From positions 1 to 64,000 of IMG/VR virus record IMGVR_UViG_3300022935_000005: DNA of 64,000 nucleotides; one strand, 5' to 3'. The notes beneath the pieces were generated by a model that saw only the letters and a program-made list of their open reading frames with translations, had not been told where the DNA came from and made no database searches. Below, piece by piece: positions 1 to 28,090 of the stretch. The first letter of the stretch is position 1, and the number at the start of each line of letters is the position of its first letter. A program made the translations under genes and the position numbers.

Positions 1-278
1 TTTCGGAGACGCGCGTTTCCTCCAGTTCTCGCGTAGAGTTCCCCACTATTCACTTTGCCCCTCTGTACACGAGAGACTTGGTCGCCCCGCTGCTGATCGC
101 GTTTTTGTTCCCGCTTTCTCGGCCCAACTCCCCGCCAGAACACAAGAGAACACATGGGCTCTCCGACTATACAAAACTCCACGAGCCGCCTCTGTACACT
201 TTCCACGACAGCGCGCGCAGCGAGGAATCGAGAGGGCTTTTCCCCGGGGCTGAAGTGAAAAAAAGTTCCGCCGATTCA

Positions 279-330
279 TGAACACTCGGACCGCGGCGTC
301 TATAATCTAAATGTTGGTAGGGAATACCAA
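279..330 (+). promoter_or_regulatory. Early promoter (TGAACA-N16-TATAAT) with 5' hairpin
   Basis: TGAACA 279-284, TATAAT 301-306, TTGGTA/TACCAA stem 314-330; same architecture as later early promoters. Confidence 0.7.
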
Positions 331-361
331 ACGCATGCTGAGAAAAAAGGAGAAAGCATAC

Positions 362-589
362 ATGAATTATGAGAAGCAGTATCAGACTAGTCGCTTCACT
401 TTCGGAGTGAACCGTAACACCACGAGCAAGCAGGCCGGCAGCAATGTCGTCACAATCGCGACGAACGCGGGGGATGGATTCTACTCCACGCCGACCACGC
501 AGCTCTCCATGACTGTAAAGGAAGCCCGCGCTCTTCAGGGTTTCCTTAACTCGACTCTCGGAACTAACGACACCGCGGTCAACAGTTAG
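362..589 (+). CDS. Hypothetical early protein (75 aa)
   Basis: AAGGAG SD before ATG 362; lies between a promoter and a terminator. Confidence 0.8.
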   Translation: MNYEKQYQTSRFTFGVNRNTTSKQAGSNVVTIATNAGDGFYSTPTTQLSMTVKEARALQGFLNSTLGTNDTAVNS

Positions 590-626
590 GATCAAGCTCT
601 CACCAGCAGGTGACGGGAAACTCCGG

Positions 627-661
627 GCCGGCGGCTCATTACGGGTCGCCGGCTTTTTTTT
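627..661 (+). terminator. Rho-independent terminator
   Basis: GCCGGCGGC/GTCGCCGGC stem followed by a T8 run. Confidence 0.85.
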
Positions 662-683
662 GTAATCTTCTAGGGAGGTGTGT

Positions 684-767
684 ATGAGAGGTATCGACGT
701 CACAGAAGTCATCGGCATTGCTGCGGTGCTGGCGTTTATCGTCTTCGCGATTGTTGTCACGGCATAA
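684..767 (+). CDS. 27-aa single-TM peptide (MRGIDVTEVIGIAAVLAFIVFAIVVTA)
   Basis: GGAGGT SD, ATG 684, TAA 765-767; translated by hand, below ORF-track cutoff. Confidence 0.65.
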   Translation: MRGIDVTEVIGIAAVLAFIVFAIVVTA

Positions 768-788
768 AACAAAAAAAAGAGAAAAAAG

Positions 789-845
789 CGTGCAAAGCGC
801 CGGCGGTTTGTGGTATAATATTGATGTTGGTCGGGGTAGACCAAC
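789..845 (+). promoter_or_regulatory. Early promoter CGTGCAAA..TGTGGTATAAT plus 5' hairpin
   Basis: CGTGCAAA 789, TATAAT 814, GTTGGTC/GACCAAC stem 826-845. Confidence 0.85.
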
Positions 846-857
846 AAAGGAGACCGC

Positions 858-1088
858 ATGCCCACCGCCGAATACAACACCGCTTTCGCCGCCCAGCTCG
901 GCGACACCCGCCGGGACCTGGCCATTATGGGTTGCGTTGTCGAGGAACAGCGCTTCCAGATCATCCGTGACGGAGCGTTCCTGACCATGACCGAGCTTGA
1001 GTATGTCGACGCCGACGGCATGACCACCCAGCTCCTGTTCGCGGGTACCGGTGACGGCGCTCCCCTTGAACGGTTCAAGCGTTTCTGA
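858..1088 (+). CDS. Hypothetical early protein
   Basis: AAGGAG SD, directly after the promoter. Confidence 0.8.
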   Translation: MPTAEYNTAFAAQLGDTRRDLAIMGCVVEEQRFQIIRDGAFLTMTELEYVDADGMTTQLLFAGTGDGAPLERFKRF

Positions 1089-1096
1089 GATTGACC

Positions 1097-1192
1097 ATGA
1101 AGACAAATACCGATATCATCATTGGCGCGCTGTTGAAGGGCGTCATCATCATGTGTGTTGTTAAGCTCTTGATTGGAGGTGTCCATGTTTGA
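1097..1192 (+). CDS. 31-aa hydrophobic peptide
   Basis: Hand translation MKTNTDIIIGALLKGVIIMCVVKLLIGGVHV; fills the gap and overlaps the next start. Confidence 0.5.
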   Translation: MKTNTDIIIGALLKGVIIMCVVKLLIGGVHV

Positions 1193-1334
1193 TGTTCAGT
1201 TGCGGGCCGTGCACCCCAAGCTGGGTGAGGGAATTGTCCGGCCGCTCAACGGTATGTACTGCGGTCGAGTCCTTGTCGAGTTTGAGGGGTTCGTCCGGTG
1301 GGTAGAGATTGATGACTTGGAATTTCTTGACTGA
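1185..1334 (+). CDS. 49-aa SH3/Tudor-like protein
   Basis: GGAGGT SD; MFDVQLRAVHPKLGEGIV...VLVEFEG (HPxxGxGxV motif); not in ORF track. Confidence 0.75.
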   Translation: MFDVQLRAVHPKLGEGIVRPLNGMYCGRVLVEFEGFVRWVEIDDLEFLD

Positions 1335-1343
1335 GAGGTAGAC

Positions 1344-1544
1344 ATGTTTGCCGGCGATCTCGTTGCACACTGGAACTGGGGTACGGGTCTTGTCCTTAAT
1401 GCTGCACCCACCCGGGAAGAGGTTCCAGAGGAGTGGCAGCACGACTGGCAGAGCGTTGTCCTTGTCCAGTTTCCTGAGTGGCACAACGCATGTGTGTGGG
1501 TCCTTGCCGCCTTCCTTGACCCGATCACCGACGAGTGTGAATAA
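1344..1544 (+). CDS. Small SH3/Tudor-like protein
   Basis: GAGG SD; GDLVAHWNWGTGLV...VLVQF. Confidence 0.75.
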   Translation: MFAGDLVAHWNWGTGLVLNAAPTREEVPEEWQHDWQSVVLVQFPEWHNACVWVLAAFLDPITDECE

Positions 1545-1556
1545 ACTTCAGATAAT

Positions 1557-1615
1557 CGTGCAAAGTACCAGCCCTCTATGGTATAATCTAGATGTTGGTC
1601 GGGGTAACTCGGCAA
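1557..1615 (+). promoter_or_regulatory. Early promoter plus 5' hairpin
   Basis: CGTGCAAA 1557, TGGTATAAT (TATAAT 1582), GTTGGTCGGGGTA leader. Confidence 0.85.
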
Positions 1616-1625
1616 AGGAGAGCGA

Positions 1626-1862
1626 ATGAAGGTCGGCACTGTCACCATCCCGGACTGGGCACCCGAGACTCTGGCCACTGTCCGCGAGGACCTCACCATT
1701 GCCGATGTGGCCTGGGTTGAAAAGCAGTGGTGCGACGTCGACGACGAGAACCGGATGCGGTGGATGACCGAGGTCCTTGTCCCCATGGGACCGTGGGACG
1801 ATCTCAAGTTCTGGTTCGAGGGCCGGGGCGCTGACGCTCGGCTTGTGTGGGCCAACTTCTAG
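1626..1862 (+). CDS. Hypothetical early protein
   Basis: AAGGAG SD; high GC3 codon usage. Confidence 0.8.
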   Translation: MKVGTVTIPDWAPETLATVREDLTIADVAWVEKQWCDVDDENRMRWMTEVLVPMGPWDDLKFWFEGRGADARLVWANF

Positions 1863-1887
1863 AGACACTGACTGAGAGGGAGAGATA

Positions 1888-2076
1888 ATGGGAAAGCACC
1901 TTTACCGCTGGAACTGGAACGAGGGTGGATACAACCAGTGCTACGCCGATACGAAGGCTCAGGCACGGAAGCTGGGTAACGCCATTGTGCCCGGTAAGCT
2001 GACCATCGACGAGAAGACTTTCCGACGGGTGAAGAACCAGGATCGCTTCTGGAAGAACTACCCCATCTTTGATTAA
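1888..2076 (+). CDS. Hypothetical early protein
   Basis: GAGGGAG SD; 62-aa ORF. Confidence 0.75.
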   Translation: MGKHLYRWNWNEGGYNQCYADTKAQARKLGNAIVPGKLTIDEKTFRRVKNQDRFWKNYPIFD

Positions 2077-2085
2077 GGAATCTAT

Positions 2086-2241
2086 TCGGGAGCCAGTAAG
2101 GCCGCGCCCACGGTAACGCTGGAGAGTTAGAGCACAGGGATGGGCGTCCCTGGCGAGCGGACTGGGTCTGCACGGATCGCATCGAAAGCCGCAGGGTGAG
2201 TAGGCACCGTTTCTGTGGGTTCGAATCCCACCTCCCGCACC
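2086..2241 (+). ncRNA. tRNA-like structured RNA (~155 nt) with canonical T-arm and acceptor stem but expanded interior
   Basis: T-arm GTGGG-TTCGAAT-CCCAC 2215-2231; CTCCCG 2232-2237 pairs with CGGGAG 2087-2092; several internal helices. Confidence 0.6.
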
Positions 2242-2280
2242 CTTTGTTTTTGCCAATAAAATCAACAGCTTGGAGAGCAC

Positions 2281-2445
2281 ATGTGGCGTGAAATTGCAGA
2301 CCTGATTCGTGAGCGTTACGAGGAGCAGACCCGAGACCCCGATGAGGACATCATTGTCTGGGGCGATGAGTATTGGGAGGAGCCGCATTACGGCTTTGAT
2401 GCAGAGTACGATCCTCCAGAGTTTGATGTCGACATGCCGTTCTAA
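2281..2445 (+). CDS. 54-aa acidic peptide ending DVDMPF (SSB-tail-like)
   Basis: GGAG SD; hand translation, 19/54 residues D/E; not in ORF track. Confidence 0.75.
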   Translation: MWREIADLIRERYEEQTRDPDEDIIVWGDEYWEEPHYGFDAEYDPPEFDVDMPF

Positions 2446-2480
2446 AATAATCACAAAAAAATAAAATAATTTTGTACATT

Positions 2481-2510
2481 CGTGCAAAGGGCTGACCACT
2501 GTGGTATAAT
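2481..2510 (+). promoter_or_regulatory. Early promoter
   Basis: CGTGCAAA 2481, TGTGGTATAAT (TATAAT 2505), A-rich upstream. Confidence 0.85.
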
Positions 2511-2555
2511 CATAATGTAAGCAAGGTTGGTTAATAAGGAACACGGAGGTTCAGC

Positions 2556-2975
2556 ATGGCAAAGGTAGGATTCGGTAAGGGCGACATCGTTAAGGTTCGG
2601 GACGACGCGTTCGGCGACCGCTGGGACAACACGGTACGGGACTATGTGCCGGAGACTACCGTCCGCGCCAAGTACTACTACACTGCTGCTGACAAGGAGC
2701 GTATGCGGGAAGAACGCCGGAAGGCAATCGCAGAGGCTCAGGCGGCGGGTGAAGACACGTTCGGTATGTGCTTTGATGATGCGGGTGAGCCGCGGTTGAT
2801 GGGTGATGATGGCATTACCTACCTCAAGAAGGGTATCGGATACCGAGTCCTCAGAGCTCGATGCCGTCAGAACTTCAACTACCACACCACTGGCGGCTGG
2901 ACAAAGCTCCTTGACCTTGACACGGGCCGGGAAGTCTTCATCAAGACTGAGAAGCTCGAGCGCGTGGAAGCCTAA
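2556..2975 (+). CDS. Hypothetical protein, possible SH3/KOW-like fold with insertion
   Basis: GGAGG SD; FGKGDIVKV at N-terminus, LLDLDTGREVFIK at C-terminus. Confidence 0.8.
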   Translation: MAKVGFGKGDIVKVRDDAFGDRWDNTVRDYVPETTVRAKYYYTAADKERMREERRKAIAEAQAAGEDTFGMCFDDAGEPRLMGDDGITYLKKGIGYRVLRARCRQNFNYHTTGGWTKLLDLDTGREVFIKTEKLERVEA

Positions 2976-3009
2976 AAAGTTTAATCATTTCAATCACTTG
3001 GGGGGTCTC

Positions 3010-3321
3010 ATGGAAAACGTAATCAAGATCAAGGTCGAACCTTATAACCCACGACGCTCTTATGGGTATCGCGACTACGATATGGAGTGCGGTTGTTGTC
3101 AGCGACCGATCCGGAACCGTGAGACTGCGACTGTGGTCGTGCGGCGCTCTTGTGATGAGCCTGGGTTTGCAGAGTTCCTTCCGATCCCAGAGCATGAGCT
3201 GCCTAACGATCCCGTTGAGTGGGGTACCTTCATCGGTAGTCACTGTGCGAAGGCTCTGCCAAAGACCCACAAGATCACTTACCGAAAGCTTTGGAAGAAC
3301 CACAGCGATACGTGGGTCTAA
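3010..3321 (+). CDS. Putative Zn-binding hypothetical protein
   Basis: CGCC...IGSHC; ATG 3010 after GGGGG. Confidence 0.75.
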   Translation: MENVIKIKVEPYNPRRSYGYRDYDMECGCCQRPIRNRETATVVVRRSCDEPGFAEFLPIPEHELPNDPVEWGTFIGSHCAKALPKTHKITYRKLWKNHSDTWV

Positions 3322-3375
3322 AAACACGCGTTACTCGGATCATAAAAAAATATAACTTGAATAACTCGTGAAAAT

Positions 3376-3442
3376 CGTGCAAATGTGACCCCCTCTGTGG
3401 TATTATATAAATGAAGGTGGGGAAAGGGTTTGAACCCCCGCC
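3376..3442 (+). promoter_or_regulatory. Early promoter plus 5' hairpin
   Basis: CGTGCAAA 3376, TGTGGTATTAT (TATTAT 3401), GGTGGGG/CCCCGCC stem 3416-3442. Confidence 0.85.
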
Positions 3443-3467
3443 ACAGTAAACGTCACAAGGAGACACC

Positions 3468-4268
3468 ATGAACCTCAAGACCTTCCGACTCCTCCAGCAG
3501 GAAAACCCCCACGCCGCGATGATCTTCGATCTCTCCGAGCGGTTCCCACGTGGACCGAAGGGTAAGCTCCGGAAGAAGCACTATCGTCGTGCGGATACGT
3601 GGTCCGACACTTGGGTCTCTGATGAACTGCTGGGTGGTGAGCTCGGCTACGACATCTTTGAGCTCTACAAGGTTGCCAAAGCCGGGATCGGTACGTGGGA
3701 GCTCGCTGATCTTTCAACGACAATCGAAGCAGCTGGTATGGGCTACCACCAGTATATGCCCTCCGCGGACGGAACGGAGAGAGTGTTTGTAAGCCGTAAG
3801 CTCTTCAAGGCCGGGGCTCAGAGTACTCGCCGTCTCAACCGACTGAACGAACGGTTCACTCAGGTGCGGAAGATGGTCGCCGAAAAGAGCAAGAAGAACC
3901 TCTACAACATCCGTATTGGTCATGAATCCAATGAGGTTGTGGTCTTCGGTGACAGCGAGCAGCACGCTCGGATGCAGTATGAAATGATGCTGAAGGCTGG
4001 TTTTGATGCCGGCACTCGTGCGGGATTCATCAACGCGGGCTGGGGTGAGCGTGATGAAGCGCCGATCCGAGTCGTGTACCGCGGACCGAGTCACGGTGTC
4101 CATGAGATCATGGCAGCCAACCAGGAGTACTCGAAGGGAATCGATGATGCCGTCAGCAAGATGGAGCTCCAGATCAAGCAGCTACAGGGCAAGATCGCTG
4201 CCGCTCGGGACATCCAGCAGATGGTCGATATGTTCACCCTTCAGTCCTGTGCCGCGGCGGCTGAATAA
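3468..4268 (+). CDS. Hypothetical protein with C-terminal coiled coil
   Basis: AAGGAG SD; 266 aa. Confidence 0.85.
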   Translation: MNLKTFRLLQQENPHAAMIFDLSERFPRGPKGKLRKKHYRRADTWSDTWVSDELLGGELGYDIFELYKVAKAGIGTWELADLSTTIEAAGMGYHQYMPSADGTERVFVSRKLFKAGAQSTRRLNRLNERFTQVRKMVAEKSKKNLYNIRIGHESNEVVVFGDSEQHARMQYEMMLKAGFDAGTRAGFINAGWGERDEAPIRVVYRGPSHGVHEIMAANQEYSKGIDDAVSKMELQIKQLQGKIAAARDIQQMVDMFTLQSCAAAAE

Positions 4269-4295
4269 GCCAACGATATCAACCACTTAGAAGTT

Positions 4296-4323
4296 TGTAC
4301 ATTTCACAAAGTTGAGGTATAAT
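4296..4323 (+). promoter_or_regulatory. Promoter TGTACA-N16-TATAAT
   Basis: Same spacing as sites at 279, 14520, 17045 and 36717. Confidence 0.6.
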
Positions 4324-4615
4324 GAAAATGAATGGTTTGGTAGAAGCGCTTAAGACCGGATGTCTTGTCTTGACTGATGATGAGTTGAACATCGCTTTCA
4401 AGATTCTGTCAGATGAGATGCTGGTTCGGCGGGAGAGACGAGAGGCAGCGACAAAGAGCAAGCTGTATCAAGGACAGGCTGTGAAGTTCTTTCATAGCGA
4501 GCAGGGAGACATCCACGGAACAATTCATAGGGTAAAGTACAAGAAGGCATTGGTCAAGGATCTCAATAGTGGTGTGGTTTGGGATGTTCCATTCCACATG
4601 CTAACGATCGTTTAG
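4322..4615 (+). CDS. Hypothetical protein, C-terminal SH3-like barrel
   Basis: LYQGQAVKF...GTIHRV...ALVKD...WDVP; true start probably 4328 because 4322 overlaps the -10. Confidence 0.75.
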   Translation: MKMNGLVEALKTGCLVLTDDELNIAFKILSDEMLVRRERREAATKSKLYQGQAVKFFHSEQGDIHGTIHRVKYKKALVKDLNSGVVWDVPFHMLTIV

Positions 4616-4651
4616 TTTGAGTTGATCACCAAGATTACGAAGGAGACGGTG

Positions 4652-4846
4652 ATGGATAAGAACAAGAAGTACAGTCATAACAACCCCAACCCCCACCTCG
4701 ACCCAGATATGCGAGACTACGTTATGGACCTCTGGTTCCGTGGTGTCGATCCAGAAGCTATTTCTCGAATGGTCCGACGCAAGATCGCTCGAGAGCGTGG
4801 GTATGAAAACAGTAAGCGCGAAAAGAATGACAAAAATGTTGCATAA
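4652..4846 (+). CDS. Small basic hypothetical protein (possible HTH)
   Basis: AAGGAG SD at ~4640; VMDLWFRGVDPEAISRMV. Confidence 0.65.
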   Translation: MDKNKKYSHNNPNPHLDPDMRDYVMDLWFRGVDPEAISRMVRRKIARERGYENSKREKNDKNVA

Positions 4847-4857
4847 GTTTTGACAAT

Positions 4858-4923
4858 CGTGCAAACAGCATAGGAACTGTGGTATTATTTATATGTTGGT
4901 GGGGATAAGGAATGGCCGCCAAC
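4858..4923 (+). promoter_or_regulatory. Early promoter plus 5' hairpin
   Basis: CGTGCAAA 4858, TGTGGTATTAT (TATTAT 4883), GTTGGTGG/CCGCCAAC stem 4895-4923. Confidence 0.85.
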
Positions 4924-4948
4924 GTTAACCCAACCAAGGAGAGTTCAC

Positions 4949-6034
4949 ATGGACATCAAGACCATCAAGACCATCGTTCCCAACCTTCCCGCCAACATTG
5001 CTGTTCTCATGCGAGGACCGACAGGTGTGGGTAAGTCTCACGTAGCCCGGGCTTTCGCTGATGAGCTCGGTCTGCCCTTCATCGATGTCCGTGGTTCCAC
5101 CATGGATGAGGCGAAGGTCGGTGGTCTGCCGGATATGCGGGCTGTCGATGAGAAGAAGGTTGCCACCTTCGTGGTCCCTAGCTGGTTCAAGACCGCTTGT
5201 GACCGCCCCTGTGTCATCATGCTGGACGAGCTTAACCGCTCCATGCCGACCGTGATGCAGGCCTTCTTCCAGATTGTCCTGGACCGTGAGCTCGGTAACG
5301 ATGAGGACGGTGTCCCCTACCGACTCCACCCGGAAACCCGGGTCATCGCGGCCATCAACGCCGGTAACGAGTACGACGTCAACGAGATGGACCCCGCTCT
5401 GCTCCGCCGCTTCTGGGTCTGCGATGTTGAGCCCACAGTGGCTGACTGGACCGATTGGGCTGCCGGTGCTGGTGTGGACAAGGTCATGGTCGAGTTCATC
5501 AAGCAGGAGCCTGCGCACTGGCGTGTTGACCCGGCCTCGGTTGAGCCCGGTACGGTTGTCCCGACTCCGGCCAGCTGGCACCGTCTCAGCGACTCGCTGG
5601 TTCACATGGGTCTGGCACCGGAGAAGCTGGCTGGTAACGATGTTCCGGCTCACTTCTACCCCGTCCTGACTGGGTTCGTCGGAGTTGAGGCAGCTATTGC
5701 CTTCCGCGACTTCGTCAAGAACTACGAGCTCCAGATCACCGCTGAAGACATCCTCGAGGGTAAGATCAAGGCTGCAGACATCAAGGATGCTCCTGCTAGC
5801 CAGCTCGCCTCGGTGGTTGAGAAGATCACGGCTCACGCCGCGGACAACAACTGGAAGCCGGCTCAGGTGAAGCGGATTGCCAAGTTCGCGGAAGAGGTTG
5901 GTGGTGAGTTCCTCATCCAGGTCTTCACCGGAGTTCAGAAGGCAGGGAACATGAAGAACCTGCTGCCCCTGAACCAGGCCATCGGCATGAAGGTGGTCGA
6001 GCTGGTTAACGCCGCTCGCGCTACTCAGAAGTAA
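4949..6034 (+). CDS. MoxR-like AAA+ ATPase (AAA_5 type)
   Basis: Walker A GPTGVGKS, Walker B IMLDELNR, sensor AAIN, MDPALLRRF. Confidence 0.9.
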   Translation: MDIKTIKTIVPNLPANIAVLMRGPTGVGKSHVARAFADELGLPFIDVRGSTMDEAKVGGLPDMRAVDEKKVATFVVPSWFKTACDRPCVIMLDELNRSMPTVMQAFFQIVLDRELGNDEDGVPYRLHPETRVIAAINAGNEYDVNEMDPALLRRFWVCDVEPTVADWTDWAAGAGVDKVMVEFIKQEPAHWRVDPASVEPGTVVPTPASWHRLSDSLVHMGLAPEKLAGNDVPAHFYPVLTGFVGVEAAIAFRDFVKNYELQITAEDILEGKIKAADIKDAPASQLASVVEKITAHAADNNWKPAQVKRIAKFAEEVGGEFLIQVFTGVQKAGNMKNLLPLNQAIGMKVVELVNAARATQK

Positions 6035-6051
6035 ACGGGAGTTTGCTCCCT

Positions 6052-6094
6052 AAGGGGGACCGGGGTTTTTGGGTTAACTCGGTCCCCCTTCTTT
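6052..6094 (+). terminator. Rho-independent terminator
   Basis: AAGGGGGACCGGG/CTCGGTCCCCCTT stem followed by CTTT. Confidence 0.75.
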
Positions 6095-6124
6095 ATACAA
6101 TCCTCTATAGACAGGAGGTAACCC

Positions 6125-6331
6125 GTGGCCGAAAAGAAAGTAACTCTTAACGAGATGATCGCTCAGATTCGAGAGTGGCATACTGAAGCTCTTAACATGC
6201 GTAACGATGGATGGACACAGCAGGCTTTTAAGGATCGACTAGAGTTCCTACATGCCCGTATGACAGCTGTGGTAGAGTCAATCAACCCTCCTCAGACGGC
6301 GCCGACAGAGAATAATAACGACAAAGAGTAG
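6125..6331 (+). CDS. Hypothetical protein
   Basis: AGGAGG SD, GTG start. Confidence 0.75.
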   Translation: MAEKKVTLNEMIAQIREWHTEALNMRNDGWTQQAFKDRLEFLHARMTAVVESINPPQTAPTENNNDKE

Positions 6332-6336
6332 ACATT

Positions 6337-6401
6337 CGTGCAATAGTGCTTTAACCTGTGGTATTATATAAATGATGGTGGGGAAGGAATAGAGCTTCTC
6401 C
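6337..6401 (+). promoter_or_regulatory. Early promoter plus 5' hairpin
   Basis: CGTGCAAT 6337, TGTGGTATTAT (TATTAT 6362), GGGGAAG/CTTCTCC stem 6380-6401. Confidence 0.85.
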
Positions 6402-6420
6402 CAAAACTACAGGAGTCCAC

Positions 6421-7821
6421 ATGGCAGACAAGACGACCGCAACAGACGCTCCCTTTGAGCACGCCTCTGAAGAGGTAGCCAAGGCATTTGACCTTCAGCC
6501 TCACCTCGTTGGTATGATGCTGGAGGAGCCGTTCTACACTAAGGTCCTTCGAATCCTGACCAAGACCCGGACTCGGAAGATCCCGACCGCCGGAGTTATT
6601 GCGAAGGACGGGGACCTGCAGATGTACTGGAACGACCGGTTCATGGCGGCTCTGCCCGGTAAGCAGATTCGGGGAGTCCTCAAGCATGAGATGCTCCACC
6701 TCATCCTCGAACACACCACCACTCGTAAGTACGAGCCTCACAAGGTTTGGAACTACGCCACTGACTTGGCGATCAACAGCCACCTCATGGACGAGCTTCC
6801 TGAGTTTGGTCTCTTCCCGGGTAAGGCGTTTAAGCCGCTGACTGAGGAACAACAGGAGCGAATGGGTGAGGCAGCTGTCAAGCAGTACGAGGCAGTGTCC
6901 AAGAAGATTGAAAGCTTCCCAGCTGGGCAGGCTGCTGAGTGGTACTTCGCGCGGCTCATGGAAGATGATGAAGTCAAGGAAGCCATTGAGAACCCGAAGC
7001 AGAACGGTAAGAGTCTGGCTGATGCTCTCCGCGATGGTGATGTGACCATCAACGAGAACGGTCAGATTTGTGATGCTGACGGTAACCCTCTCCCCACTGT
7101 CCCTGGTACGCTGGATGACCATGACGGCTGGGGCGAAATGAGCGATGAAGACCGTGAGTACATCAAGGCCAAGGTCAAGCAGGCTGCTGGTGACGCTGCC
7201 AAGGAGTGCGACCAGAAGGGTAGCTGGGGTTCGGTACCTGCAGAACTGCGGAAGCAGATCAAGGCAGCACTGGTCAACGAAGTTCCCTGGCAGAAGATCC
7301 TTGACCGCTTCTGTGGTTACAGCCGACGGGCCAACCGGACCACGAGCTACAGCCGCCTTCACAGCACCATGGGTCGTTTGGTTCCCGGTGCCAAGCGTGG
7401 GTACACGAGCTCGGTGGCAGCTTACATTGACCAGTCCGGCTCAGTCAGCGATCGTGAGCTGGCCCTCTGCTTCGGCGAGCTGGCTAACCTGGCCAAGAAC
7501 ACTGAGTTCACCTGCTACCACTTCGACACCGAGGTGGATGAGAAGAGCAAGACGGTATGGAAGCGTAAGGGTCACCCTGCCAACCGGACTCGCTGCGGTG
7601 GTACGGACTTCGCTGCTCCGACCGAGCACGCTGGAAAGCACAAGCGGGAGTTCGACGGGTACATCATCCTGACCGACGGCTACGCTCCTGACCCGGGTCC
7701 GAGCCGGTTGCCCCGAGCTTGGGTGGTTACCCCTGACGGAGCAGTTCAGGACTGGATGTTCAACTACAAGAAGGACGTCATCGTAAAGATGACTTGGCCA
7801 AAGAGTCTGCAGGAGGCGTAA
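6421..7821 (+). CDS. DUF2201-family protein: HExxH metallopeptidase-like domain plus vWA-like domain
   Basis: HEMLH, WNYATDLAIN, MIDAS DQSGS, GGTDF, ILTDG. Confidence 0.9.
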   Translation: MADKTTATDAPFEHASEEVAKAFDLQPHLVGMMLEEPFYTKVLRILTKTRTRKIPTAGVIAKDGDLQMYWNDRFMAALPGKQIRGVLKHEMLHLILEHTTTRKYEPHKVWNYATDLAINSHLMDELPEFGLFPGKAFKPLTEEQQERMGEAAVKQYEAVSKKIESFPAGQAAEWYFARLMEDDEVKEAIENPKQNGKSLADALRDGDVTINENGQICDADGNPLPTVPGTLDDHDGWGEMSDEDREYIKAKVKQAAGDAAKECDQKGSWGSVPAELRKQIKAALVNEVPWQKILDRFCGYSRRANRTTSYSRLHSTMGRLVPGAKRGYTSSVAAYIDQSGSVSDRELALCFGELANLAKNTEFTCYHFDTEVDEKSKTVWKRKGHPANRTRCGGTDFAAPTEHAGKHKREFDGYIILTDGYAPDPGPSRLPRAWVVTPDGAVQDWMFNYKKDVIVKMTWPKSLQEA

Positions 7822-8129
7822 TGAAGTTTAAGAAGGCAAATGAACGAGTGGAATGTGCTGATGGATTCTCCATGAGTGTACAGGCAAGTGAACGCAGCTA
7901 CTGTACTCCACGTGACGACCAGGGACCCTATACTGCGGTAGAGGTAGGTTTCCCCTCCTCATATGATTACTACCTCCACGAATACGCTGAGACCCCGGAG
8001 GATCCAACGGGGACAGTATACGGTTGGGTACCAGCTGATACAGTTATGATGTGTATTGAAGCACATGGCGGCATGATCAGTGGAGAGCTTCCGCCGCTAG
8101 TAAAAACAGATTTTGAGAGCATCACATGA
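7821..8129 (+). CDS. Conserved phage hypothetical protein
   Basis: GGAGG SD; CADGFSMSVQAS...VEVGFPS...VYGWVP. Confidence 0.8.
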   Translation: MKFKKANERVECADGFSMSVQASERSYCTPRDDQGPYTAVEVGFPSSYDYYLHEYAETPEDPTGTVYGWVPADTVMMCIEAHGGMISGELPPLVKTDFESIT

Positions 8130-8470
8130 AAGTAGACGAAGAAAAAGTAGACATTGCCAGAATGTTCTGGATAGAGGACTGGGACAAGATGTCTGCCTTT
8201 GATACAGATATAGAGAACGTAGAGTGGCACGTCACAAACTGCATGACGTATCTCATCCAGCTCAGCGAAGAAGTGGTACCTCTATACAAGCCTCCGCCGA
8301 ACATAGAGCTAGAGGGAGACTGGAACGAGAGAGAGATGCTGACTCTATATAGAGACCTGCTTGAAGCGGCAGAGCGTCGGGGGTACGAACCAGATGCCGG
8401 GATGATCACCCGGATTCGGAAAGCTCTACCCCCGAAGCGTGTCCGGGTCCGGAGAGTTGTTCGGCCTTGA
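8126..8470 (+). CDS. Hypothetical protein
   Basis: ATGA overlap with upstream gene. Confidence 0.7.
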   Translation: MKVDEEKVDIARMFWIEDWDKMSAFDTDIENVEWHVTNCMTYLIQLSEEVVPLYKPPPNIELEGDWNEREMLTLYRDLLEAAERRGYEPDAGMITRIRKALPPKRVRVRRVVRP

Positions 8471-8475
8471 GTTCC

Positions 8476-8750
8476 TGTATAGAGGGGGGCTGGTAAACAG
8501 GCCTGGTAAAATGTACAGAGGGGCCCCACTCCGAGCGAGAAAAAGTGGCCCAGATGGCCCCATCGGGGGCCCCTGAAAACAGGCCCCTTTTGGCCCCTTC
8601 TGGTGGCCCCCTGGAGCCTACTCAGTGGGCCTTTCTGGAGGGCATATGCCTAAGCGCGGTAAAAAATTTTTTCGGAGCGATTTTGAAAACCAAAAGCCCA
8701 AAATCCCAAAAAAAATTCTCGGGAAATTTTGAAAACGAAAAGGGTACCCC
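8476..8750. repeat. Non-coding GGCCC repeat cluster followed by A/T tracts
   Basis: GGCCC at 8522, 8547, 8556, 8568, 8582, 8592, 8605; then AAAAAATTTTTT and repeated A-tracts. Confidence 0.7.
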
Positions 8751-8796
8751 AAGAGAGAGACTCAACGCGGTACTAAAGAAAACGAAAGAAGAGCAC

Positions 8797-9036
8797 ATGA
8801 ACAATCTCCACATCATTGCCAACTATCTATTCGATAACCCAGGAGCGCGGTACACGGATGTCACAAAGCACTTGTGCCAGGAGCGCGGAAAGGTATGGAG
8901 CAAAGGGCACTATACTCGGTACTTCACCAACCCGATCTACAGCTCAGGTCGCCGGTACGCTCACCACCTCTGGTGCAAGACCCCATGCGGTGGATGGATG
9001 TTGACATTGGAAGGATATGGATATGTCCGCAAGTAA
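8797..9036 (+). CDS. Hypothetical protein (possible winged helix)
   Basis: MNNLHIIANYLFDNPGARYTDV; ORF-track extension to 8545 spans the repeat DNA and is probably spurious. Confidence 0.7.
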   Translation: MNNLHIIANYLFDNPGARYTDVTKHLCQERGKVWSKGHYTRYFTNPIYSSGRRYAHHLWCKTPCGGWMLTLEGYGYVRK

Positions 9037-9298
9037 GCTCATAGAGGTCGGAGATCTGGTCCGGTGGGGCTGGCCCCGCTTCCACAGCGATTCTCGCGTG
9101 GGAATCGTGACGCGAGTAGATATCAAACCTCGAGGCGCCGGATTCAGAGTGCCCAACCCGCGAGTCCGCTATGTTGTGCAGTGGTTCTACCCAGATGGAC
9201 AACCCAGCATCACTCAAGAGCACGTCTTCAACAATGAGATAACACGAGTCACAGAGGATCGAAATCCATGGCAAGACAAAACAGAGACTTCAAAGTAG
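9017..9298 (+). CDS. Small SH3/KOW-like protein
   Basis: IEVGDLVRW...GIVTRV...YVVQWF. Confidence 0.8.
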   Translation: MDMSASKLIEVGDLVRWGWPRFHSDSRVGIVTRVDIKPRGAGFRVPNPRVRYVVQWFYPDGQPSITQEHVFNNEITRVTEDRNPWQDKTETSK

Positions 9299-9534
9299 GA
9301 GACATTGTCCAGTGGGCTCCACCGATCGGCGGCGCCAACTCCGGTCACGTCTTTAGAGATGCAGTGGGTCTTATTGTAGGTGTCAAGTACCCAGACCCCG
9401 ACTCACAGCGTAACGAATGGGCAGACCCTCACATGTGGTACACAGTCCAGTGGTTCAGAGACGGCATTGCATCGGGTCGACCAGATCACATCGTTGAACA
9501 CCACATTCAGAGAGTTCGAGATGACGCACCATAG
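9268..9534 (+). CDS. Small SH3/KOW-like protein
   Basis: FKVGDIVQW...GLIVGV...YTVQWF. Confidence 0.8.
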   Translation: MARQNRDFKVGDIVQWAPPIGGANSGHVFRDAVGLIVGVKYPDPDSQRNEWADPHMWYTVQWFRDGIASGRPDHIVEHHIQRVRDDAP

Positions 9535-9817
9535 CAAGCTCAGCATCGGCGCGGGAGACACAGTGGTCCGGGTTCATGAGCAGGAAGACACCGATCCCTA
9601 CCCAGGACTCGTTATCAGGCGGGTAGAACCTCGTGAACTCTTGAGTATGGTGTTTGGAGAGGGAGATGACTTCGAAATGGGGGAAGCTCTATGGATGCGA
9701 GATGCAGCATCTGGTCTAGAGGAGTATTCGGGTGAATGGGTCCGCTATGAAGTCCTTTGGCCGGATGGTCGGTTCTCGATCGAATCGATCGCCCAAATCA
9801 GGAAGGCATATTCGTGA
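9521..9817 (+). CDS. Small SH3/KOW-like protein
   Basis: IGAGDTVVRV...GLVIRR...YEVLWPDG. Confidence 0.75.
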   Translation: MTHHSKLSIGAGDTVVRVHEQEDTDPYPGLVIRRVEPRELLSMVFGEGDDFEMGEALWMRDAASGLEEYSGEWVRYEVLWPDGRFSIESIAQIRKAYS

Positions 9818-10017
9818 TCGGTGTGGGAGACATTGTCTGCGTTGACGGAGATCTACTGGGTACAGCAATGGGACTCGGTCTTGTTACCCGGGTTTGTGAG
9901 TCTCGCTTTTCTAATTCATGTACTCGGTTTGTAGACGTCCTCTGGGCCTCGGGTGATATGTTCAAGGATGTTGATATGAACGTGCTGTTGCTTGTGCATT
10001 CTGCCGGCAGCCCGTGA
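9814..10017 (+). CDS. Small SH3/KOW-like protein
   Basis: GTGA overlap; IGVGDIVCV...GLVTRV...VDVLWASG. Confidence 0.75.
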   Translation: MIGVGDIVCVDGDLLGTAMGLGLVTRVCESRFSNSCTRFVDVLWASGDMFKDVDMNVLLLVHSAGSP

Positions 10018-10039
10018 CCTGCTAGTATACTTAAATGTT

Positions 10040-10276
10040 ATGGACACCGACTCACGCTATTCTGATGTTATCATTGGCTCACTTGTTGACCATCCGGTCT
10101 ACGGCCCGGGGCTGATCACTGCTGTCACGACCGAACCCGCATTTGCGACGCGCCAAAGCACGCATCGTCCCGATTACATCATTGTCTGTAGCGTCCTATG
10201 GAACACGGGTGAGTTGCAAACTGGCTGGCCCGCCAACCGGCTCGTCGATTACCTTGTGTTAACGTCGATTATCTAG
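10040..10276 (+). CDS. Small SH3/Tudor-like protein
   Basis: IGSLVDHPVYGPGLITAV...SVLWNTG; TATACTTA 6 nt upstream of ATG. Confidence 0.75.
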   Translation: MDTDSRYSDVIIGSLVDHPVYGPGLITAVTTEPAFATRQSTHRPDYIIVCSVLWNTGELQTGWPANRLVDYLVLTSII

Positions 10277-10293
10277 AGCGTATACTTAACGAT

Positions 10294-10575
10294 ATGGCAA
10301 AGGAAACTGTATTCTCCCCGCGCGGTGCTCTGCACCGGAACCTTGTTGGGTGCATCATCGTTCATCCGCACTTGGGTCACGGGCTCGTCACGAGCACGGA
10401 TCGCTACTGGACTGAAGTCCGGCAACAGCGACGTCAAGTCTGGACTGTTCTCTGGTCTGAGACCGGTACCGCTGAAGATGTTGACGAACGCATCATGCAA
10501 CACTGCATGATCATTGACGACGGAGACGGCGCTAAAGAGTGGGGTTCATGGGCCGAGGTTGTAGGTCACAAGTGA
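10294..10575 (+). CDS. Small SH3/Tudor-like protein
   Basis: VGCIIVHPHLGHGLVTS...WTVLWSETG; TATACTTA 5 nt upstream of ATG. Confidence 0.75.
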   Translation: MAKETVFSPRGALHRNLVGCIIVHPHLGHGLVTSTDRYWTEVRQQRRQVWTVLWSETGTAEDVDERIMQHCMIIDDGDGAKEWGSWAEVVGHK

Positions 10576-10611
10576 CCCTCTGAGACCCGCGGTCTCGAGA
10601 CATGATTGAGT

Positions 10612-10890
10612 CTAAGGTCGGCGAGTCCCGGGACGACTGGAGATGACTCTGAAGCGTGCCTTGGCACGGAGCTTCTCACCTGTTCGCGGGTGAGTCAAGT
10701 CAATTTCTCCCTTGAGTTCCGAGTCTCTATCTGGATCTGACATCATGATTCTGGATATCTGCGCCTGTATTTCACTCATTTGCTTTTTGAGCGCCTTGTC
10801 AATTGTGATGACGCTCCGCACTACGAAGGCAAGTCCCCCGGTGATCATGATGGCAATAGCATAGACCGTTAATTCAAAACCCATATCCAT
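10612..10890 (-). CDS. Membrane-anchored coiled-coil hypothetical protein (92 aa)
   Basis: AAAGGA SD before MDMGFELTVYAIAIM; N-terminal TM helix. Confidence 0.7.
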   Translation of the reverse strand: MDMGFELTVYAIAIMITGGLAFVVRSVITIDKALKKQMSEIQAQISRIMMSDPDRDSELKGEIDLTHPRTGEKLRAKARFRVISSRPGTRRP

Positions 10891-11360
10891 AGGGTATCCT
10901 TTCACAACCGATCTACCTTTAAGTATGGTGACTGGATGTATTGTGATTTCTCTTGGAGTGCGATCCGAGCAAGAAGGCACGCCTTCGGCGCGAGGATGCA
11001 CCCATGAAACGCAAAAAGTGGGTGTGCCGAAAACGCGTCCCGCGTTATTCACTGTTTCCAAAAAAACGCGTGTGTCCGGCGCCGACGCGCCGATAAATGA
11101 GAAAACCCACTTCACTCTCCGGCGGTGCCATTGTATGAGGGTGGGAAAGGTAACAACGTGGGTTTGACTATTATAATAGAGCTGTAATCGTTGAGGAGGA
11201 GGCGGATGGGTCGTGTTGGAGCGAATCAAGAAGATCAACAAGACGTTCGCTGTAATATCTATAATAGTTGCTGTCTGGTTGCACATGTACGTAAAATCAA
11301 TCAAGCAACAGAGCGATGATGCTGTATATTTAGAAAAACAACCAGGATGGAGAAATCAAA

Positions 11361-27775: not shown

Positions 27776-28090
27776 CTAGCAAGGATTGTCAACTGTCTCT
27801 ATTGAGGTTTTTAAGATTTGTTTAGCTATTTTCTCTATTTGACATATCCTCATCCTGGTCACATCAAAAATGTCACCAACCTCTTGAAGAGTAAGCGGTC
27901 CTTGCTCAGAAGCGTTGATGATACAATTTTGAAAATTTCCAGCCATATCTTGGAAATAACGGCATTCAGAAACAACACAACTTACATCAAAGTTTTTGCA
28001 TGCAGAAAAACATGTCTCTCCTTTTATTGGTTGAGCATTGTCTCTTAAATTTATTAATGATGGTTCTTTCTTATTTGTTTTCTTACCCAC
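27776..28090 (-). CDS. Sigma-70 region 4 HTH protein with Cys-rich N-terminal part
   Basis: LTLQEVGDIFDVTRMRICQIEK; GGAG SD before GTG. Confidence 0.85.
   Translation of the reverse strand: MGKKTNKKEPSLINLRDNAQPIKGETCFSACKNFDVSCVVSECRYFQDMAGNFQNCIINASEQGPLTLQEVGDIFDVTRMRICQIEKIAKQILKTSIETVDNPC

What the first reader, a model, noticed from the sequence alone, without database searches (positions are those of the whole stretch)
279..6401. Early promoter cassette in which transcripts start with a covarying 5' stem-loop
Seen: six copies of CGTGCAA-(N)-TGGTAT(A/T)AT at 789, 1557, 2481, 3376, 4858 and 6337, with a 25-nt offset to the -10 (24 at 2481), plus a variant at 279. Six of the seven continue into a G-rich leader whose downstream partner changes to keep pairing: 314-330, 826-845, 1595-1615, 3416-3442, 4895-4923, 6380-6401. 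Each stem ends upstream of the SD. Established: 5'-terminal hairpins block 5'-end-dependent decay (RppH/RNase E, RNase J). Inference: a modular promoter-plus-stabiliser cassette, with a non-canonical -35 (TGCAAA), that may also act as a recombination unit for swapping early genes.
Basis: partly seen in the sequence, partly recalled or inferred. Interest (0 to 1): 0.65.

Follow-up and report, generated by a model that had tools for sequence, protein, structure and literature searches.

The report
Phage promoter cassettes with 5' hairpin leaders
An uncultured 281-kb salt-marsh phage and its marine relatives drive their small early genes from a repeated promoter whose transcripts usually start with a short hairpin; this probably steadies the messages and is a new variant of known phage promoter/stem-loop cassettes.

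Summary
CGTGCAA-N15-TGGTATWAT occurs five times exactly (0 expected), once with N14 (2481), plus a degenerate copy at 279. All are on the + strand, in front of small ORFan genes. Relaxed scans find about 21 such cassettes in the 280,913-bp viral contig, one in front of the phage's own sigma-factor gene.

They begin 0-5 nt after the predicted start, the purine 7 nt past the -10, and end before the Shine-Dalgarno. Single hairpins are only modestly better than shuffles. In aggregate the pairing is real:
- swapping 3' halves between leaders weakens the folds (p<=5e-5);
- orthologous leaders in relatives keep a stem through compensatory changes;
- the sense strand folds better than the antisense.

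The stems are not in one register, and the 5' arm is a conserved polypurine tract, so "covarying" is only partly apt.

The -35 position holds a clade-wide box, YGTGYAA(A), not TTGACA.

The stabiliser role is plausible but untested, because RNA contigs cannot map starts. The recombination-unit idea has partial support. The closest known systems are the PeSL cassettes of T4-type phages, whose stem-loop is placed differently and acts as a terminator, and 5' stem-loop mRNA stabilisers. I rate it a new variant of a known kind, of moderate interest.

The parts
279..306 (+). Degenerate cassette promoter: TGAACA-16-TATAAT, with -10 at 301-306 and predicted +1 at G313. Drives gene 362-589.
   Evidence: orthologous copy in L024
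314..330 (+). 5' leader hairpin UUGGUA / GGGAA / UACCAA
   Evidence: -5.6 kcal/mol, z -0.8; the orthologous leader in L024 has a different stem, GUGGGG/CUCCAC
625..662 (+). Intrinsic terminator (13-bp stem plus T-run) after gene 362-589. It is the left edge of the block that relatives lack.
661..3320 (+). Block absent from syntenic relatives L024 and L233. It holds a small hydrophobic ORF (685-767), cassettes 789, 1557 and 2481, about 10 small ORFan genes and a tRNA-like stretch.
789..819 (+). Cassette promoter: box CGTGCAAA 789-796, extended -10 TGTGGTATAAT 809-819, predicted +1 at G826. Drives gene 858-1088.
826..845 (+). 5' hairpin GUUGGUC / GGGGUA / GACCAAC, starting at the predicted +1
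   Evidence: -11.7 kcal/mol, z -5.4
1557..1587 (+). Cassette promoter with predicted +1 at G1594. Drives gene 1626-1862.
1598..1613 (+). 5' hairpin GUCGGG / GUAA / CUCGGC (two G.U pairs)
   Evidence: -8.3 kcal/mol, z -3.9
2481..2510 (+). Cassette promoter (spacer one base shorter) with no stable leader hairpin. The leader starts ATGTAA. Drives gene 2556-2975.
3376..3406 (+). Cassette promoter with predicted +1 at G3413. Drives gene 3468-4268.
3416..3442 (+). 5' hairpin GGUGGGG / 13-nt loop / CCCCGCC
   Evidence: -13.3 kcal/mol, z -1.6
4858..4888 (+). Cassette promoter (TTGACAAT-CGTGCAAA...TGTGGTATTAT) with predicted +1 at G4895. Drives the MoxR-like AAA ATPase gene 4949-6034.
4895..4923 (+). 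5' hairpin GUUGGUGG / 13-nt loop / CCGCCAAC, starting at the predicted +1
   Evidence: -12.8 kcal/mol, z -2.9; orthologue L233 keeps the stem with U-G>U-A and G-C>G-U changes and a 9-nt loop
6337..6367 (+). Cassette promoter with predicted +1 at G6374. Drives the DUF2201 / VWA-like gene 6421-7821.
6379..6403 (+). 5' hairpin GGGGAAG(G) / loop / (C)CUUCUCC. The 5' tract is the same as in the cassette at contig position 252767, but it is paired in another register.

Best explanation
What it is. These are about 21 same-strand transcription-start cassettes in the ORFan-rich early region of an uncultured ~281-kb phage from salt-marsh and estuary samples. The early region runs from about 181 kb of the contig, across its ends, to about 6.4 kb. 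Related marine phage contigs carry the same cassettes.

Anatomy of a cassette:
1. A clade-specific box YGTGYAA(A) where a -35 would sit.
2. A spacer of 17-18 bp.
3. An extended -10, TRTG-n-TATWAT.
4. A pyrimidine/purine start 7 nt after the -10.

The strong extended -10 should let host RNA polymerase fire these promoters early; this is inferred. About two thirds of the transcripts then open with a polypurine tract (for example GGUGGGGAA or AAGGAGGGAA). It pairs with a downstream pyrimidine tract to give a 6-11-bp hairpin. The hairpin starts 0-5 nt from the 5' end and stops before the Shine-Dalgarno sequence.

Most likely role (inferred, not shown). The 5'-terminal hairpin leaves too few unpaired 5' nucleotides for 5'-end-dependent decay (RppH with RNase E, or RNase J). 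That would give long-lived, strongly expressed early messages whatever gene lies downstream. Cassettes with short leaders have the ribosome-binding site at the same place instead.

The cassette behaves as a module. The spacer-to-hairpin part differs between orthologous genes of related phages, and cassettes within one genome resemble each other. This fits exchange or conversion between cassettes.
For: Shown:
- Motif statistics: 5 exact matches against 0 in shuffles. With a relaxed -10 there are 24 on the + strand and 4 weak ones on the - strand, against about 7 expected on both strands together.
- Of 183 cassettes in this phage and related contigs, 89% have a purine at nt 7 after the -10 (only one has C), and 75% have a pyrimidine at nt 6. 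This supports the predicted start.
- All 34 G-rich leaders compiled from this phage and related contigs, taken without a pairing criterion but picked by eye, fold into a 5'-proximal hairpin: median 9 bp and -10.6 kcal/mol, with 3 or fewer unpaired 5' nt in 25 of 34.
- Swap test on 33 leaders chosen without regard to pairing: cognate halves -11.0 against non-cognate -8.4 kcal/mol, permutation p<=5e-5. Within this genome alone p=0.002, and Stouffer Z is -4.9 against shuffled 3' halves.
- RNA-level signature: 35 of 310 pairs are G.U, and the sense strand is more stable than the antisense in 26 of 34 (Wilcoxon p=3e-4).
- Orthologous leaders keep a stem. In the sigma-gene leaders L351 and L352 the 9-bp stem shows 2 double and 3 wobble changes and none disruptive, while the loop and flanks are identical. 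The ATPase leader of the window and of L233 share a 10-bp stem with wobble changes and a changed loop length.
- Cassettes 6337 and 252767 share a near-identical 5' tract, yet different 3' arms pair with different parts of it.
- The genes behind the cassettes are ORFans, plus a MoxR-like ATPase and a DUF2201 protein. The phage's sigma gene is behind a cassette in this phage and in 6 relatives.

Established knowledge: B. subtilis RppH needs at least 2, and prefers 3 or more, unpaired 5' nucleotides. 5' stem-loops stabilise ompA, papA and aprE mRNAs (review PMC3997798).
Against: - No start site is mapped. Metatranscriptome data were available only as assembled contigs. Some of these cross the promoters (4679-5314, 6078-6373) or begin upstream of the -10 (4874, 1587). 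One begins 3 nt after a predicted start (3416). None of this is decisive.
- With the start at nt 7, 9 of 34 hairpins leave 4-7 unpaired nucleotides, which may be too many for protection.
- Single hairpins are weak against shuffles that keep composition (mean z -1.0).
- The 5' arm is far more conserved than a purely structural element needs, and is always the purine strand (83% against 17% purine). This hints at a further sequence-specific role.
- A third of the cassettes lack the hairpin, as do the AT-rich relatives.
- The host, and so its decay machinery, is unknown.
Confidence: 0.5

Rival explanations
1. The hairpin, or its conserved polypurine arm and purine-rich loop, is a binding site for a phage or host protein. 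That protein would control the early regulon after initiation. It could act as an antiterminator loading site like nut/boxB or put, as a translational operator, or as a target of a nuclease that shuts off early messages.
For: The 5' arm (..GGU.GGGGA..) and loop motifs (GGAAUGG, AAGGAA) recur across paralogues and across relatives far more than pairing requires. The element sits at a fixed place behind every promoter of one regulon. A terminator follows at least one cassette gene.
Against: Loop length (3-14 nt), loop sequence, stem length and pairing register all vary, unlike boxB-type sites. A third of the cassettes lack the element. No Rfam family matches. No candidate RNA-binding protein was identified.
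Confidence: 0.15
2. The hairpin masks the 5' tract. The G-rich start of the transcript is there for its own reason: either it is the leftover ribosome-binding site of a short-leader cassette fused to a gene with its own site, or it is an initially transcribed sequence that the promoter needs. The 3' arm evolved to hide it from ribosomes. The hairpin is then damage control rather than a stabiliser.
For: Short-leader cassettes carry AAGGAGG exactly where long-leader cassettes carry the 5' arm. Intermediates exist, for example ATGTTGGTAAGGAGG at 244938. Arms in relatives read AAGGAGGGAAGGA and GGGAGGAAAGG, with CCUCC-like partners. The 5' arm is conserved while the 3' arm varies and pairs in different registers.
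Against: The commonest arm, GGUGGGG, is a poor match to a Shine-Dalgarno sequence. This does not explain why the tract would be kept instead of lost. In this genome the 3' arms are not consistently complementary to the real SD (by inspection).
Confidence: 0.15
3. PeSL-type element: the stem-loop is a terminator or attenuator for transcription arriving from upstream, and the cassette's main significance is as a recombination site that shuffles ORFans.
For: A repeated promoter plus G/C-rich stem-loop in an ORFan-rich region, as in RB49 and phi1 (PMC2839356). There is a block difference of three cassettes against relatives, and a replaced spacer-to-hairpin segment. Paralogues are as similar as orthologues.
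Against: The hairpin lies downstream of the -10 and of the predicted start, not between or over the promoter hexamers. No U-tract follows it. RNA-library contigs run across two of the cassettes. The block's breakpoints are about 55 nt upstream of the box and just after a terminator, not inside the repeat. The longest exact identity between cassettes is 30 nt, and otherwise at most 20 nt.
Confidence: 0.07
4. Transcription starts at the A of the conserved ATG (nt 5 after the -10), giving leaderless mini-ORFs whose translation regulates the downstream gene.
For: ATG sits at nt 5-7 in most cassettes of this genome. It opens short frames of 2-14 codons in several of them, ATGTAA at 2481 and 242712 for example (by inspection).
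Against: Relatives have TTG, ATA or CTA at that place. The frames vary in length and overlap the genes out of frame. A start only 5 nt after the -10 is unusual, whereas nt 6/7 fit the pyrimidine/purine start rule.
Confidence: 0.05

Closest known systems
PeSL (promoter-early stem-loop) cassettes of T4-type phages RB49, phi1, PST/T4 and nt-1/KVP40 (Arbiol et al. 2010, PMC2839356; Comeau et al. 2014, PMC4122927)
   Same: Many copies of a strong early promoter joined to a G-run/C-run stem-loop. They sit in intergenic positions in ORFan-rich, variable regions and end at the SD of the next gene. Gene-content differences between relatives lie next to them.
   Different: In PeSLs the stem-loop lies mostly between the -35 and -10 or over the -10, and it was shown to act as a terminator. 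The promoter matches the sigma-70 consensus, including the -35, and conservation spans about 100 bp. Here the hairpin is in the transcribed leader and has no U-tract. The -35 position holds a different, clade-specific box. Identity between copies is short. No sign of mini-circles could be looked for.
5'-terminal stem-loop mRNA stabilisers (E. coli ompA and papA; B. subtilis aprE leader), reviewed in PMC3997798
   Same: A hairpin within a few nucleotides of the 5' end, upstream of the ribosome-binding site, with a variable stem sequence. This is the mechanism proposed here.
   Different: Those are single cellular genes with measured half-life effects. Here it is a repeated module on a whole phage regulon, the purine strand is always 5', and nothing has been measured.
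Polypurine / STAB-SD 5' stabilisers (phage SP82 early RNA, Hue et al. 1995, cited in PMC3997798; cryIIIA)
   Same: A polypurine, SD-like sequence near the 5' end of a phage early transcript.
   Different: Those act single-stranded, by binding the 30S subunit. Here most of the tract is base-paired and only some loops (AAGGAA) are free.
Extended -10 (TGn / TRTG) sigma-70 promoters
   Same: TRTG-n-TATAAT with a weak or absent -35. Such promoters can work without -35 contacts.
   Different: An 8-nt box, CGTGCAAA, is nevertheless nearly invariant at the -35 position across the clade.

Membership tests
PeSL cassettes (T4-type phages) | Strong sigma-70-like early promoter repeated in intergenic regions of ORFan-rich variable regions | tested here: met
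   About 21 copies before ORFan genes. The -10 is consensus; the -35 is not (3/6).
PeSL cassettes (T4-type phages) | Stem-loop placed between the -35 and -10 or over the -10, acting as a terminator/attenuator for upstream transcription | tested here: not met
   The hairpins start 5-14 nt after the -10. No U-tract follows, and the terminator scan does not call them. RNA-library contigs cross two cassettes. Position as described in PMC2839356.
PeSL cassettes (T4-type phages) | Indels and replacements between close relatives have their junctions in the cassettes | tested here: inconclusive
   The block 661-3320 (three cassettes) is absent from L024 and L233, but its junctions lie beside the repeat. 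The spacer-to-hairpin segment 4866-4926 is replaced between homologous flanks. Near-identical contigs do not cover this region.
5'-terminal stem-loop mRNA stabilisers | Hairpin within about 0-3 unpaired nucleotides of the true 5' end | tested here: inconclusive
   With the predicted start (nt 7), the median is 2.5 unpaired nt and 25 of 34 have 3 or fewer. The real 5' ends are not mapped.
5'-terminal stem-loop mRNA stabilisers | Pairing, not sequence, is conserved | tested here: met
   Swap test; compensatory changes between L351 and L352; G.U pairs and strand asymmetry. Caveat: the 5' arm itself is conserved.
5'-terminal stem-loop mRNA stabilisers | Removing the stem shortens mRNA half-life | not testable with these tools
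   Needs reporter and half-life experiments.
Polypurine / STAB-SD stabilisers | Single-stranded SD-like sequence near the 5' end that binds 30S | tested here: inconclusive
   The 5' arm is 83% purine and SD-like in several relatives, but it is predicted to be paired. Only some loops show a free AAGGA.
nut/boxB-type antiterminator sites | Fixed short stem with a conserved purine pentaloop, plus boxA | tested here: not met
   Loops are 3-14 nt with varying sequence, the register varies, and there is no consensus structure.
Any Rfam family | Match to a curated covariance model | tested here: not met
   No relevant match in window 1-9000 at E<=1.
Canonical sigma-70 promoter | TTGACA-17-TATAAT | tested here: not met
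   The -10 is perfect or 5/6 and has TG. The -35 position holds TGCAAA (17 bp) or GTGCAA (18 bp), 3/6 either way, and the consensus scan does not call the six copies.

The most novel reading that the evidence does not exclude
The invariant box YGTGYAA(A) may not be a weak host -35. It may be the target of a clade-specific factor.

Grounds:
- The phage and its relatives encode an RpoD-like sigma whose match to solved SigA ends at region 4.1, so the -35-reading helix-turn-helix appears to be missing.
- A conserved overlapping 92-aa ORF follows that sigma gene.
- Two further proteins carry a lone sigma region-4 motif.
- The sigma gene is itself behind a cassette.

The cassettes could then be a self-amplifying phage regulon. 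Host polymerase would start it through the extended -10. A split or re-targeted phage sigma module would then read the box. The polypurine hairpin could be a second recognition mark on the RNAs of that regulon.
Probability: 0.15. Interest if true: 0.7.

Novelty: new variant of a known kind. Interest (0 to 1): 0.45.

Why it matters
If the 5' hairpin is a stabiliser, this is a natural, portable promoter-plus-leader module. A whole lineage of large uncultured marine phages would use it to standardise expression of fast-changing early genes. That is a different solution from the PeSL cassettes of T4-type phages.

It also gives a ready signature for finding the early regulon and the variable regions in metagenomic phage contigs: box, extended -10, and a polypurine hairpin.

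It also raises a testable question: what reads the non-canonical -35 box in a phage that carries its own sigma factor lacking region 4.2?

Tried and rejected
- Alignment-based covariation. MAFFT plus RNAalifold on 32 paralogous or related leaders (A1) and on 6 orthologous sigma leaders (A2) gave no consensus structure. Loops and pairing registers differ, so no covariance model was built. I used alignment-free tests instead.
- Start sites from RNA data. Only Logan contigs of six metatranscriptome runs were available, and contig ends are not interpretable as starts.
- Host assignment. The one genome-contig scan found the cassette in marine MAG/SAG contigs labelled Pelagibacteraceae, Flavobacteriales, Rhodospirillaceae, Peribacter, Halobacteriovorax, Rubritalea and Pedosphaera. 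These labels are inconsistent and the contigs are probably mis-binned phage DNA. There is no near DNA match among cultured phages, and protein matches are at most about 32% identical.
- Population-level indels. Contigs with an identical sigma gene (probably the same phage) do not cover the first 9 kb.
- Alternative pairing of the 3' arm with the real SD (a switch): no consistent complementarity in this genome, by inspection.
- RNase III site: the stems of 6-11 bp are too short.
- DNA cruciform or operator palindrome: disfavoured by the G.U pairs and the strand asymmetry and by the variable arm sequences.
- The 92-aa ORF after the sigma gene as a detached region 4.2: this is a resemblance by eye only, with no Pfam match at E<=1.

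Full report
**Source.** The window is the first 64 kb of a 280,913-bp IMG/VR viral contig, 45% G+C, with nearly all long ORFs on the + strand. Near-identical DNA is held by salt-marsh and estuary metagenomes and by six metatranscriptome runs. No cultured phage is close. There is no DNA match, and the proteins tried match at about 32% identity or less. The last bases of the contig resemble its first bases, so the ends probably abut.

**Observation.** CGTGCAA-N15-TGGTATWAT matches exactly at 789, 1557, 3376, 4858 and 6337, all on the + strand. None occurred in 100 dinucleotide shuffles.
- The 2481 copy has a spacer one base shorter.
- The copy at 279 keeps only TGAACA-16-TATAAT.
- The repeat finder groups all seven through the -10 and what follows: TATWAT-NNNN-ATG-..GGT.GGG.
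- The whole contig has two more exact copies. With a relaxed -10 there are 24 matches on the + strand and 4 weak ones on the - strand, against about 7 expected for both strands.
- About 21 of these look real. They lie at 181-274 kb and 0.3-6.4 kb, which is one region if the ends join.
- The -10 is of the TRTG-n-TATAAT extended type.
- In this genome and its nearest relatives the box is preceded by a TTGACA-like hexamer plus AT. At about 27 bp from the -10, that hexamer is too far away to serve as a -35.

**Predicted start.** Among 183 non-redundant cassettes from this phage and related contigs, nt 7 after the -10 is a purine in 89% (C once), and nt 6 is a pyrimidine in 75%. I therefore take nt 7 as +1. 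The conserved 'ATG' is then A, T(-1), G(+1). Relatives have TTG, ATA or CTA there, which argues against a conserved start codon.

| Stem | kcal/mol | z |
|---|---|---|
| 314-330 | -5.6 | -0.8 |
| 826-845 | -11.7 | -5.4 |
| 1598-1613 | -8.3 | -3.9 |
| 3416-3442 | -13.3 | -1.6 |
| 4895-4923 | -12.8 | -2.9 |
| 6379-6403 | -10.6 | -2.0 |

The 2481 leader has none. All stems end before the Shine-Dalgarno sequence.

**Relatives.** A scan of IMG/VR with the promoter pattern, a second scan with the leader pattern, and one scan of GTDB genomes returned many marine and estuarine phage contigs with the same box, -10 and start. Some have a short leader in which AAGGAGG follows the start directly. Others have a long leader that begins with a polypurine tract.
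- I compiled 34 long G-rich leaders, 11 from this phage and 23 from relatives. I picked them by eye for a G-rich leader and applied no pairing criterion. All 34 fold into a 5'-proximal hairpin: median 9 bp and -10.6 kcal/mol, with a 5' arm 83% purine and a 3' arm 17% purine.
- With +1 at nt 7, the unpaired 5' stretch has a median of 2.5 nt and is 3 nt or less in 25 of 34.

**Is the pairing more than composition?**
- Against 3' halves shuffled with dinucleotides kept, single leaders are weak (mean z -1.0), but together they give Stouffer Z -4.9.
- A swap test on 33 leaders, chosen only by leader length and a G-rich run, gave -11.0 kcal/mol for cognate 5'+3' halves against -8.4 for non-cognate ones (permutation p<=5e-5). 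Within this genome alone p=0.002.
- 35 of 310 predicted pairs are G.U. The sense strand folds better than the antisense in 26 of 34 (Wilcoxon p=3e-4). This points to RNA rather than a DNA palindrome. The caveat is that the stems were defined on the sense strand.
- MAFFT plus RNAalifold finds no common structure. The stems use different parts of the 5' tract and the loops run from 3 to 14 nt. So this is not one RNA family with a fixed architecture.

**Orthologous leaders** give the cleanest evidence.
- The phage's sigma gene is preceded by a cassette here and in six relatives at 72-84% amino-acid identity. All six distinct leaders fold from about +1.
- L351 and L352 differ in the 9-bp stem by two double changes (U-A to C-G, G-C to A-U) and three wobble-compatible single changes, with none disruptive. 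Their loops and downstream leaders are identical.
- The ATPase leader of the window and of L233 share a 10-bp stem, with U-G/U-A and G-C/G-U differences and loops of 13 against 9 nt.
- Cassettes 6337 and 252767 share 38 of 40 nt of -10, 5' tract and loop. Their 3' arms differ: CUUCUCC pairs with GGGGAAG, and CCCCCAC pairs with GGUGGGG.

**The -35 position.** Promoters found through protein homology, not through the pattern, carry CGTGCAAA almost without change, even where the TG of the extended -10 is lost. About 30 AT-rich contigs, whose ATPase is only about 45% identical, have GTGTAA 18 bp before TATAAT and no hairpin. The box is thus a clade-wide element. It matches TTGACA in 3 of 6 positions in either register. 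What reads it is unknown.

**The phage's sigma.** The phage encodes an RpoD/SigA-like sigma of 252 aa. Its alignment to solved SigA stops at the end of region 4.1. A conserved, overlapping 92-aa ORF with no Pfam match follows. Two other proteins carry a lone Sigma70_r4 motif. Because the sigma gene itself lies behind a cassette, the cassette must be usable by host polymerase, which fits 'early'. A later contribution by phage factors is not excluded.

**Modularity.** L024 and L233 are syntenic with the window (ATPase 88-89% identical).
- Both go directly from the homologue of gene 362-589 and its terminator to the cassette and homologue of gene 3468-4268. They lack window 661-3320, which holds a small ORF, three cassettes and about ten ORFans.
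- The junctions lie just after the terminator's T-run and at the stop codon of gene 3010-3321, about 55 nt before the box. They are therefore next to the repeat rather than inside it.
- Before the ATPase gene, window and L024 are homologous at 4821-4865 and from 4927 onward. They are not homologous over 4866-4926, which covers the spacer, the -10 and the hairpin. There L024 and L049 carry another leader type.
- Paralogous cassettes within the genome are as similar as orthologous ones (0.67-0.83 against 0.63-0.79).
- Exact identity between cassettes is 30 nt at most, and otherwise 20 nt or less.
- This fits exchange or conversion among cassettes but does not prove it. Contigs that carry an identical sigma gene do not cover this region.

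**RNA data.** RNA-library contigs cover the region in patches. One starts at 3416, 3 nt after a predicted start. Others cross promoters or start upstream of the -10. Contigs cannot show starts, and DNA carry-over is possible, so this neither supports nor refutes the model.

**Interpretation.**
- *Shown:* a repeated promoter cassette with a clade-specific box, and an RNA-level hairpin at the start of most long leaders that is kept through sequence change.
- *Inferred:* host polymerase fires these promoters early, and the hairpin protects the 5' end from RppH/RNase E or RNase J. B. subtilis RppH needs at least 2-3 unpaired nucleotides, and 5' stem-loops stabilise ompA, papA and aprE mRNAs (PMC3997798). 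In short-leader cassettes the ribosome-binding site occupies the same place and could protect the end itself.
- *Against a purely structural role:* the purine strand is always 5' and is well conserved. A protein-binding role, or masking of an SD-like tract, remain live rivals.

**Comparison with known systems.** PeSL cassettes of T4-type phages are the nearest described thing (PMC2839356 and PMC4122927). Their stem-loop lies within or over the promoter and terminates upstream transcription, and their promoter matches the sigma-70 consensus. That defining position was tested here and is not met. No Rfam family matches.

**Verdict.** This is a new variant of a known kind, of moderate interest.

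Noticed in passing
G000:C1:184798-185919 (outside the window; locus L271:1302-2423): RpoD/SigA-like sigma factor of 252 aa whose match to SigA ends at region 4.1, so there is no region 4.2 helix-turn-helix. A conserved overlapping 92-aa ORF without any Pfam match follows. The same two-ORF layout is found in six relatives. The gene sits behind a cassette with an 11-bp 5' hairpin.
   Followed up: partly
window 27776-28090 (- strand); also G000:C1:175157-176161: A 104-aa Cys-rich protein that carries only a sigma-70 region-4 motif (31 bits); it is one of the few minus-strand genes. A 334-aa protein has the same lone motif (26 bits). Either could bind a -35-like site.
   Followed up: partly
window 2090-2245: tRNA-like 3' part (GGTTCGAATCCCACC T-arm, then CTCCCGCACC, with CGGGAG about 145 nt upstream). 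It is not called by ARAGORN or Rfam, and its fold is no better than shuffles (z +0.7). An RNA-library contig covers 2022-2228.
   Followed up: partly
window 460-659: In metatranscriptome run X17 a contig of depth 556 lies in this bin, against 2-8 elsewhere. The bin holds the 3' end of gene 362-589 and the terminator 625-655. There is a weak Rfam sRNA-like hit at 509-660 (E 0.027). It could be a stable 3' fragment or another organism's sequence.
   Followed up: no
window 1-11000: The first ~11 kb is 52-60% G+C, while the rest of the genome is 39-48% (apart from one 52% bin near 235 kb). Relatives encode the same proteins with lower G+C (ATPase 88% amino-acid but 74% nucleotide identity).
   Followed up: no
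window 1-35 and G000:C1:280875-280913: The contig end (...cgcgtttccaactgttctcgcgt) nearly repeats the contig start (...cgcgtttcctccagttctcgcgt). The record is probably circular or terminally redundant, so the early region runs across its ends. Positions 1-280 are G+C-rich, with no obvious gene, and carry a repeated ctctgtacac.
   Followed up: partly
window 4296-4334: A different promoter-like site (TGTACA-16-TATAAT) lies directly before gene 4322/4328-4615. An in-frame ATG sits at nt 5-7 after the -10, the same geometry as the ATG in the cassettes. The mRNA may be leaderless, or the gene may use the GAGG at 4314-4317.
   Followed up: no
window 22480-24408: PrkA/YeaG-type serine protein kinase / AAA protein (phrog_22605, E 4e-133). 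Its best phage matches are Thermus phages and huge uncultured phages, at about 31% identity.
   Followed up: no
window 1328-1345 and 1869-1886: A repeated gene junction, TGACTGAGAGG(T/G)AGA(C/G)AT, which contains a stop codon and a Shine-Dalgarno sequence and runs into the next ATG, between small early genes.
   Followed up: no
loci L237-L267 (IMG/VR marine contigs): About 30 AT-rich contigs, some of 200-240 kb, carry the same ATPase at about 45% identity behind GTGTAA-N18-TATAAT. They have no hairpin, and the ATPase appears to start with TTG. This looks like a large sister group of marine phages.
   Followed up: partly
locus L126 (Pelagibacteraceae single-cell assembly AG-430-L09, 7-kb contig): A cassette with an 11-bp leader hairpin sits on a small contig of a SAR11 single-cell genome. 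This is a possible host link, but other copies are binned with unrelated phyla.
   Followed up: no
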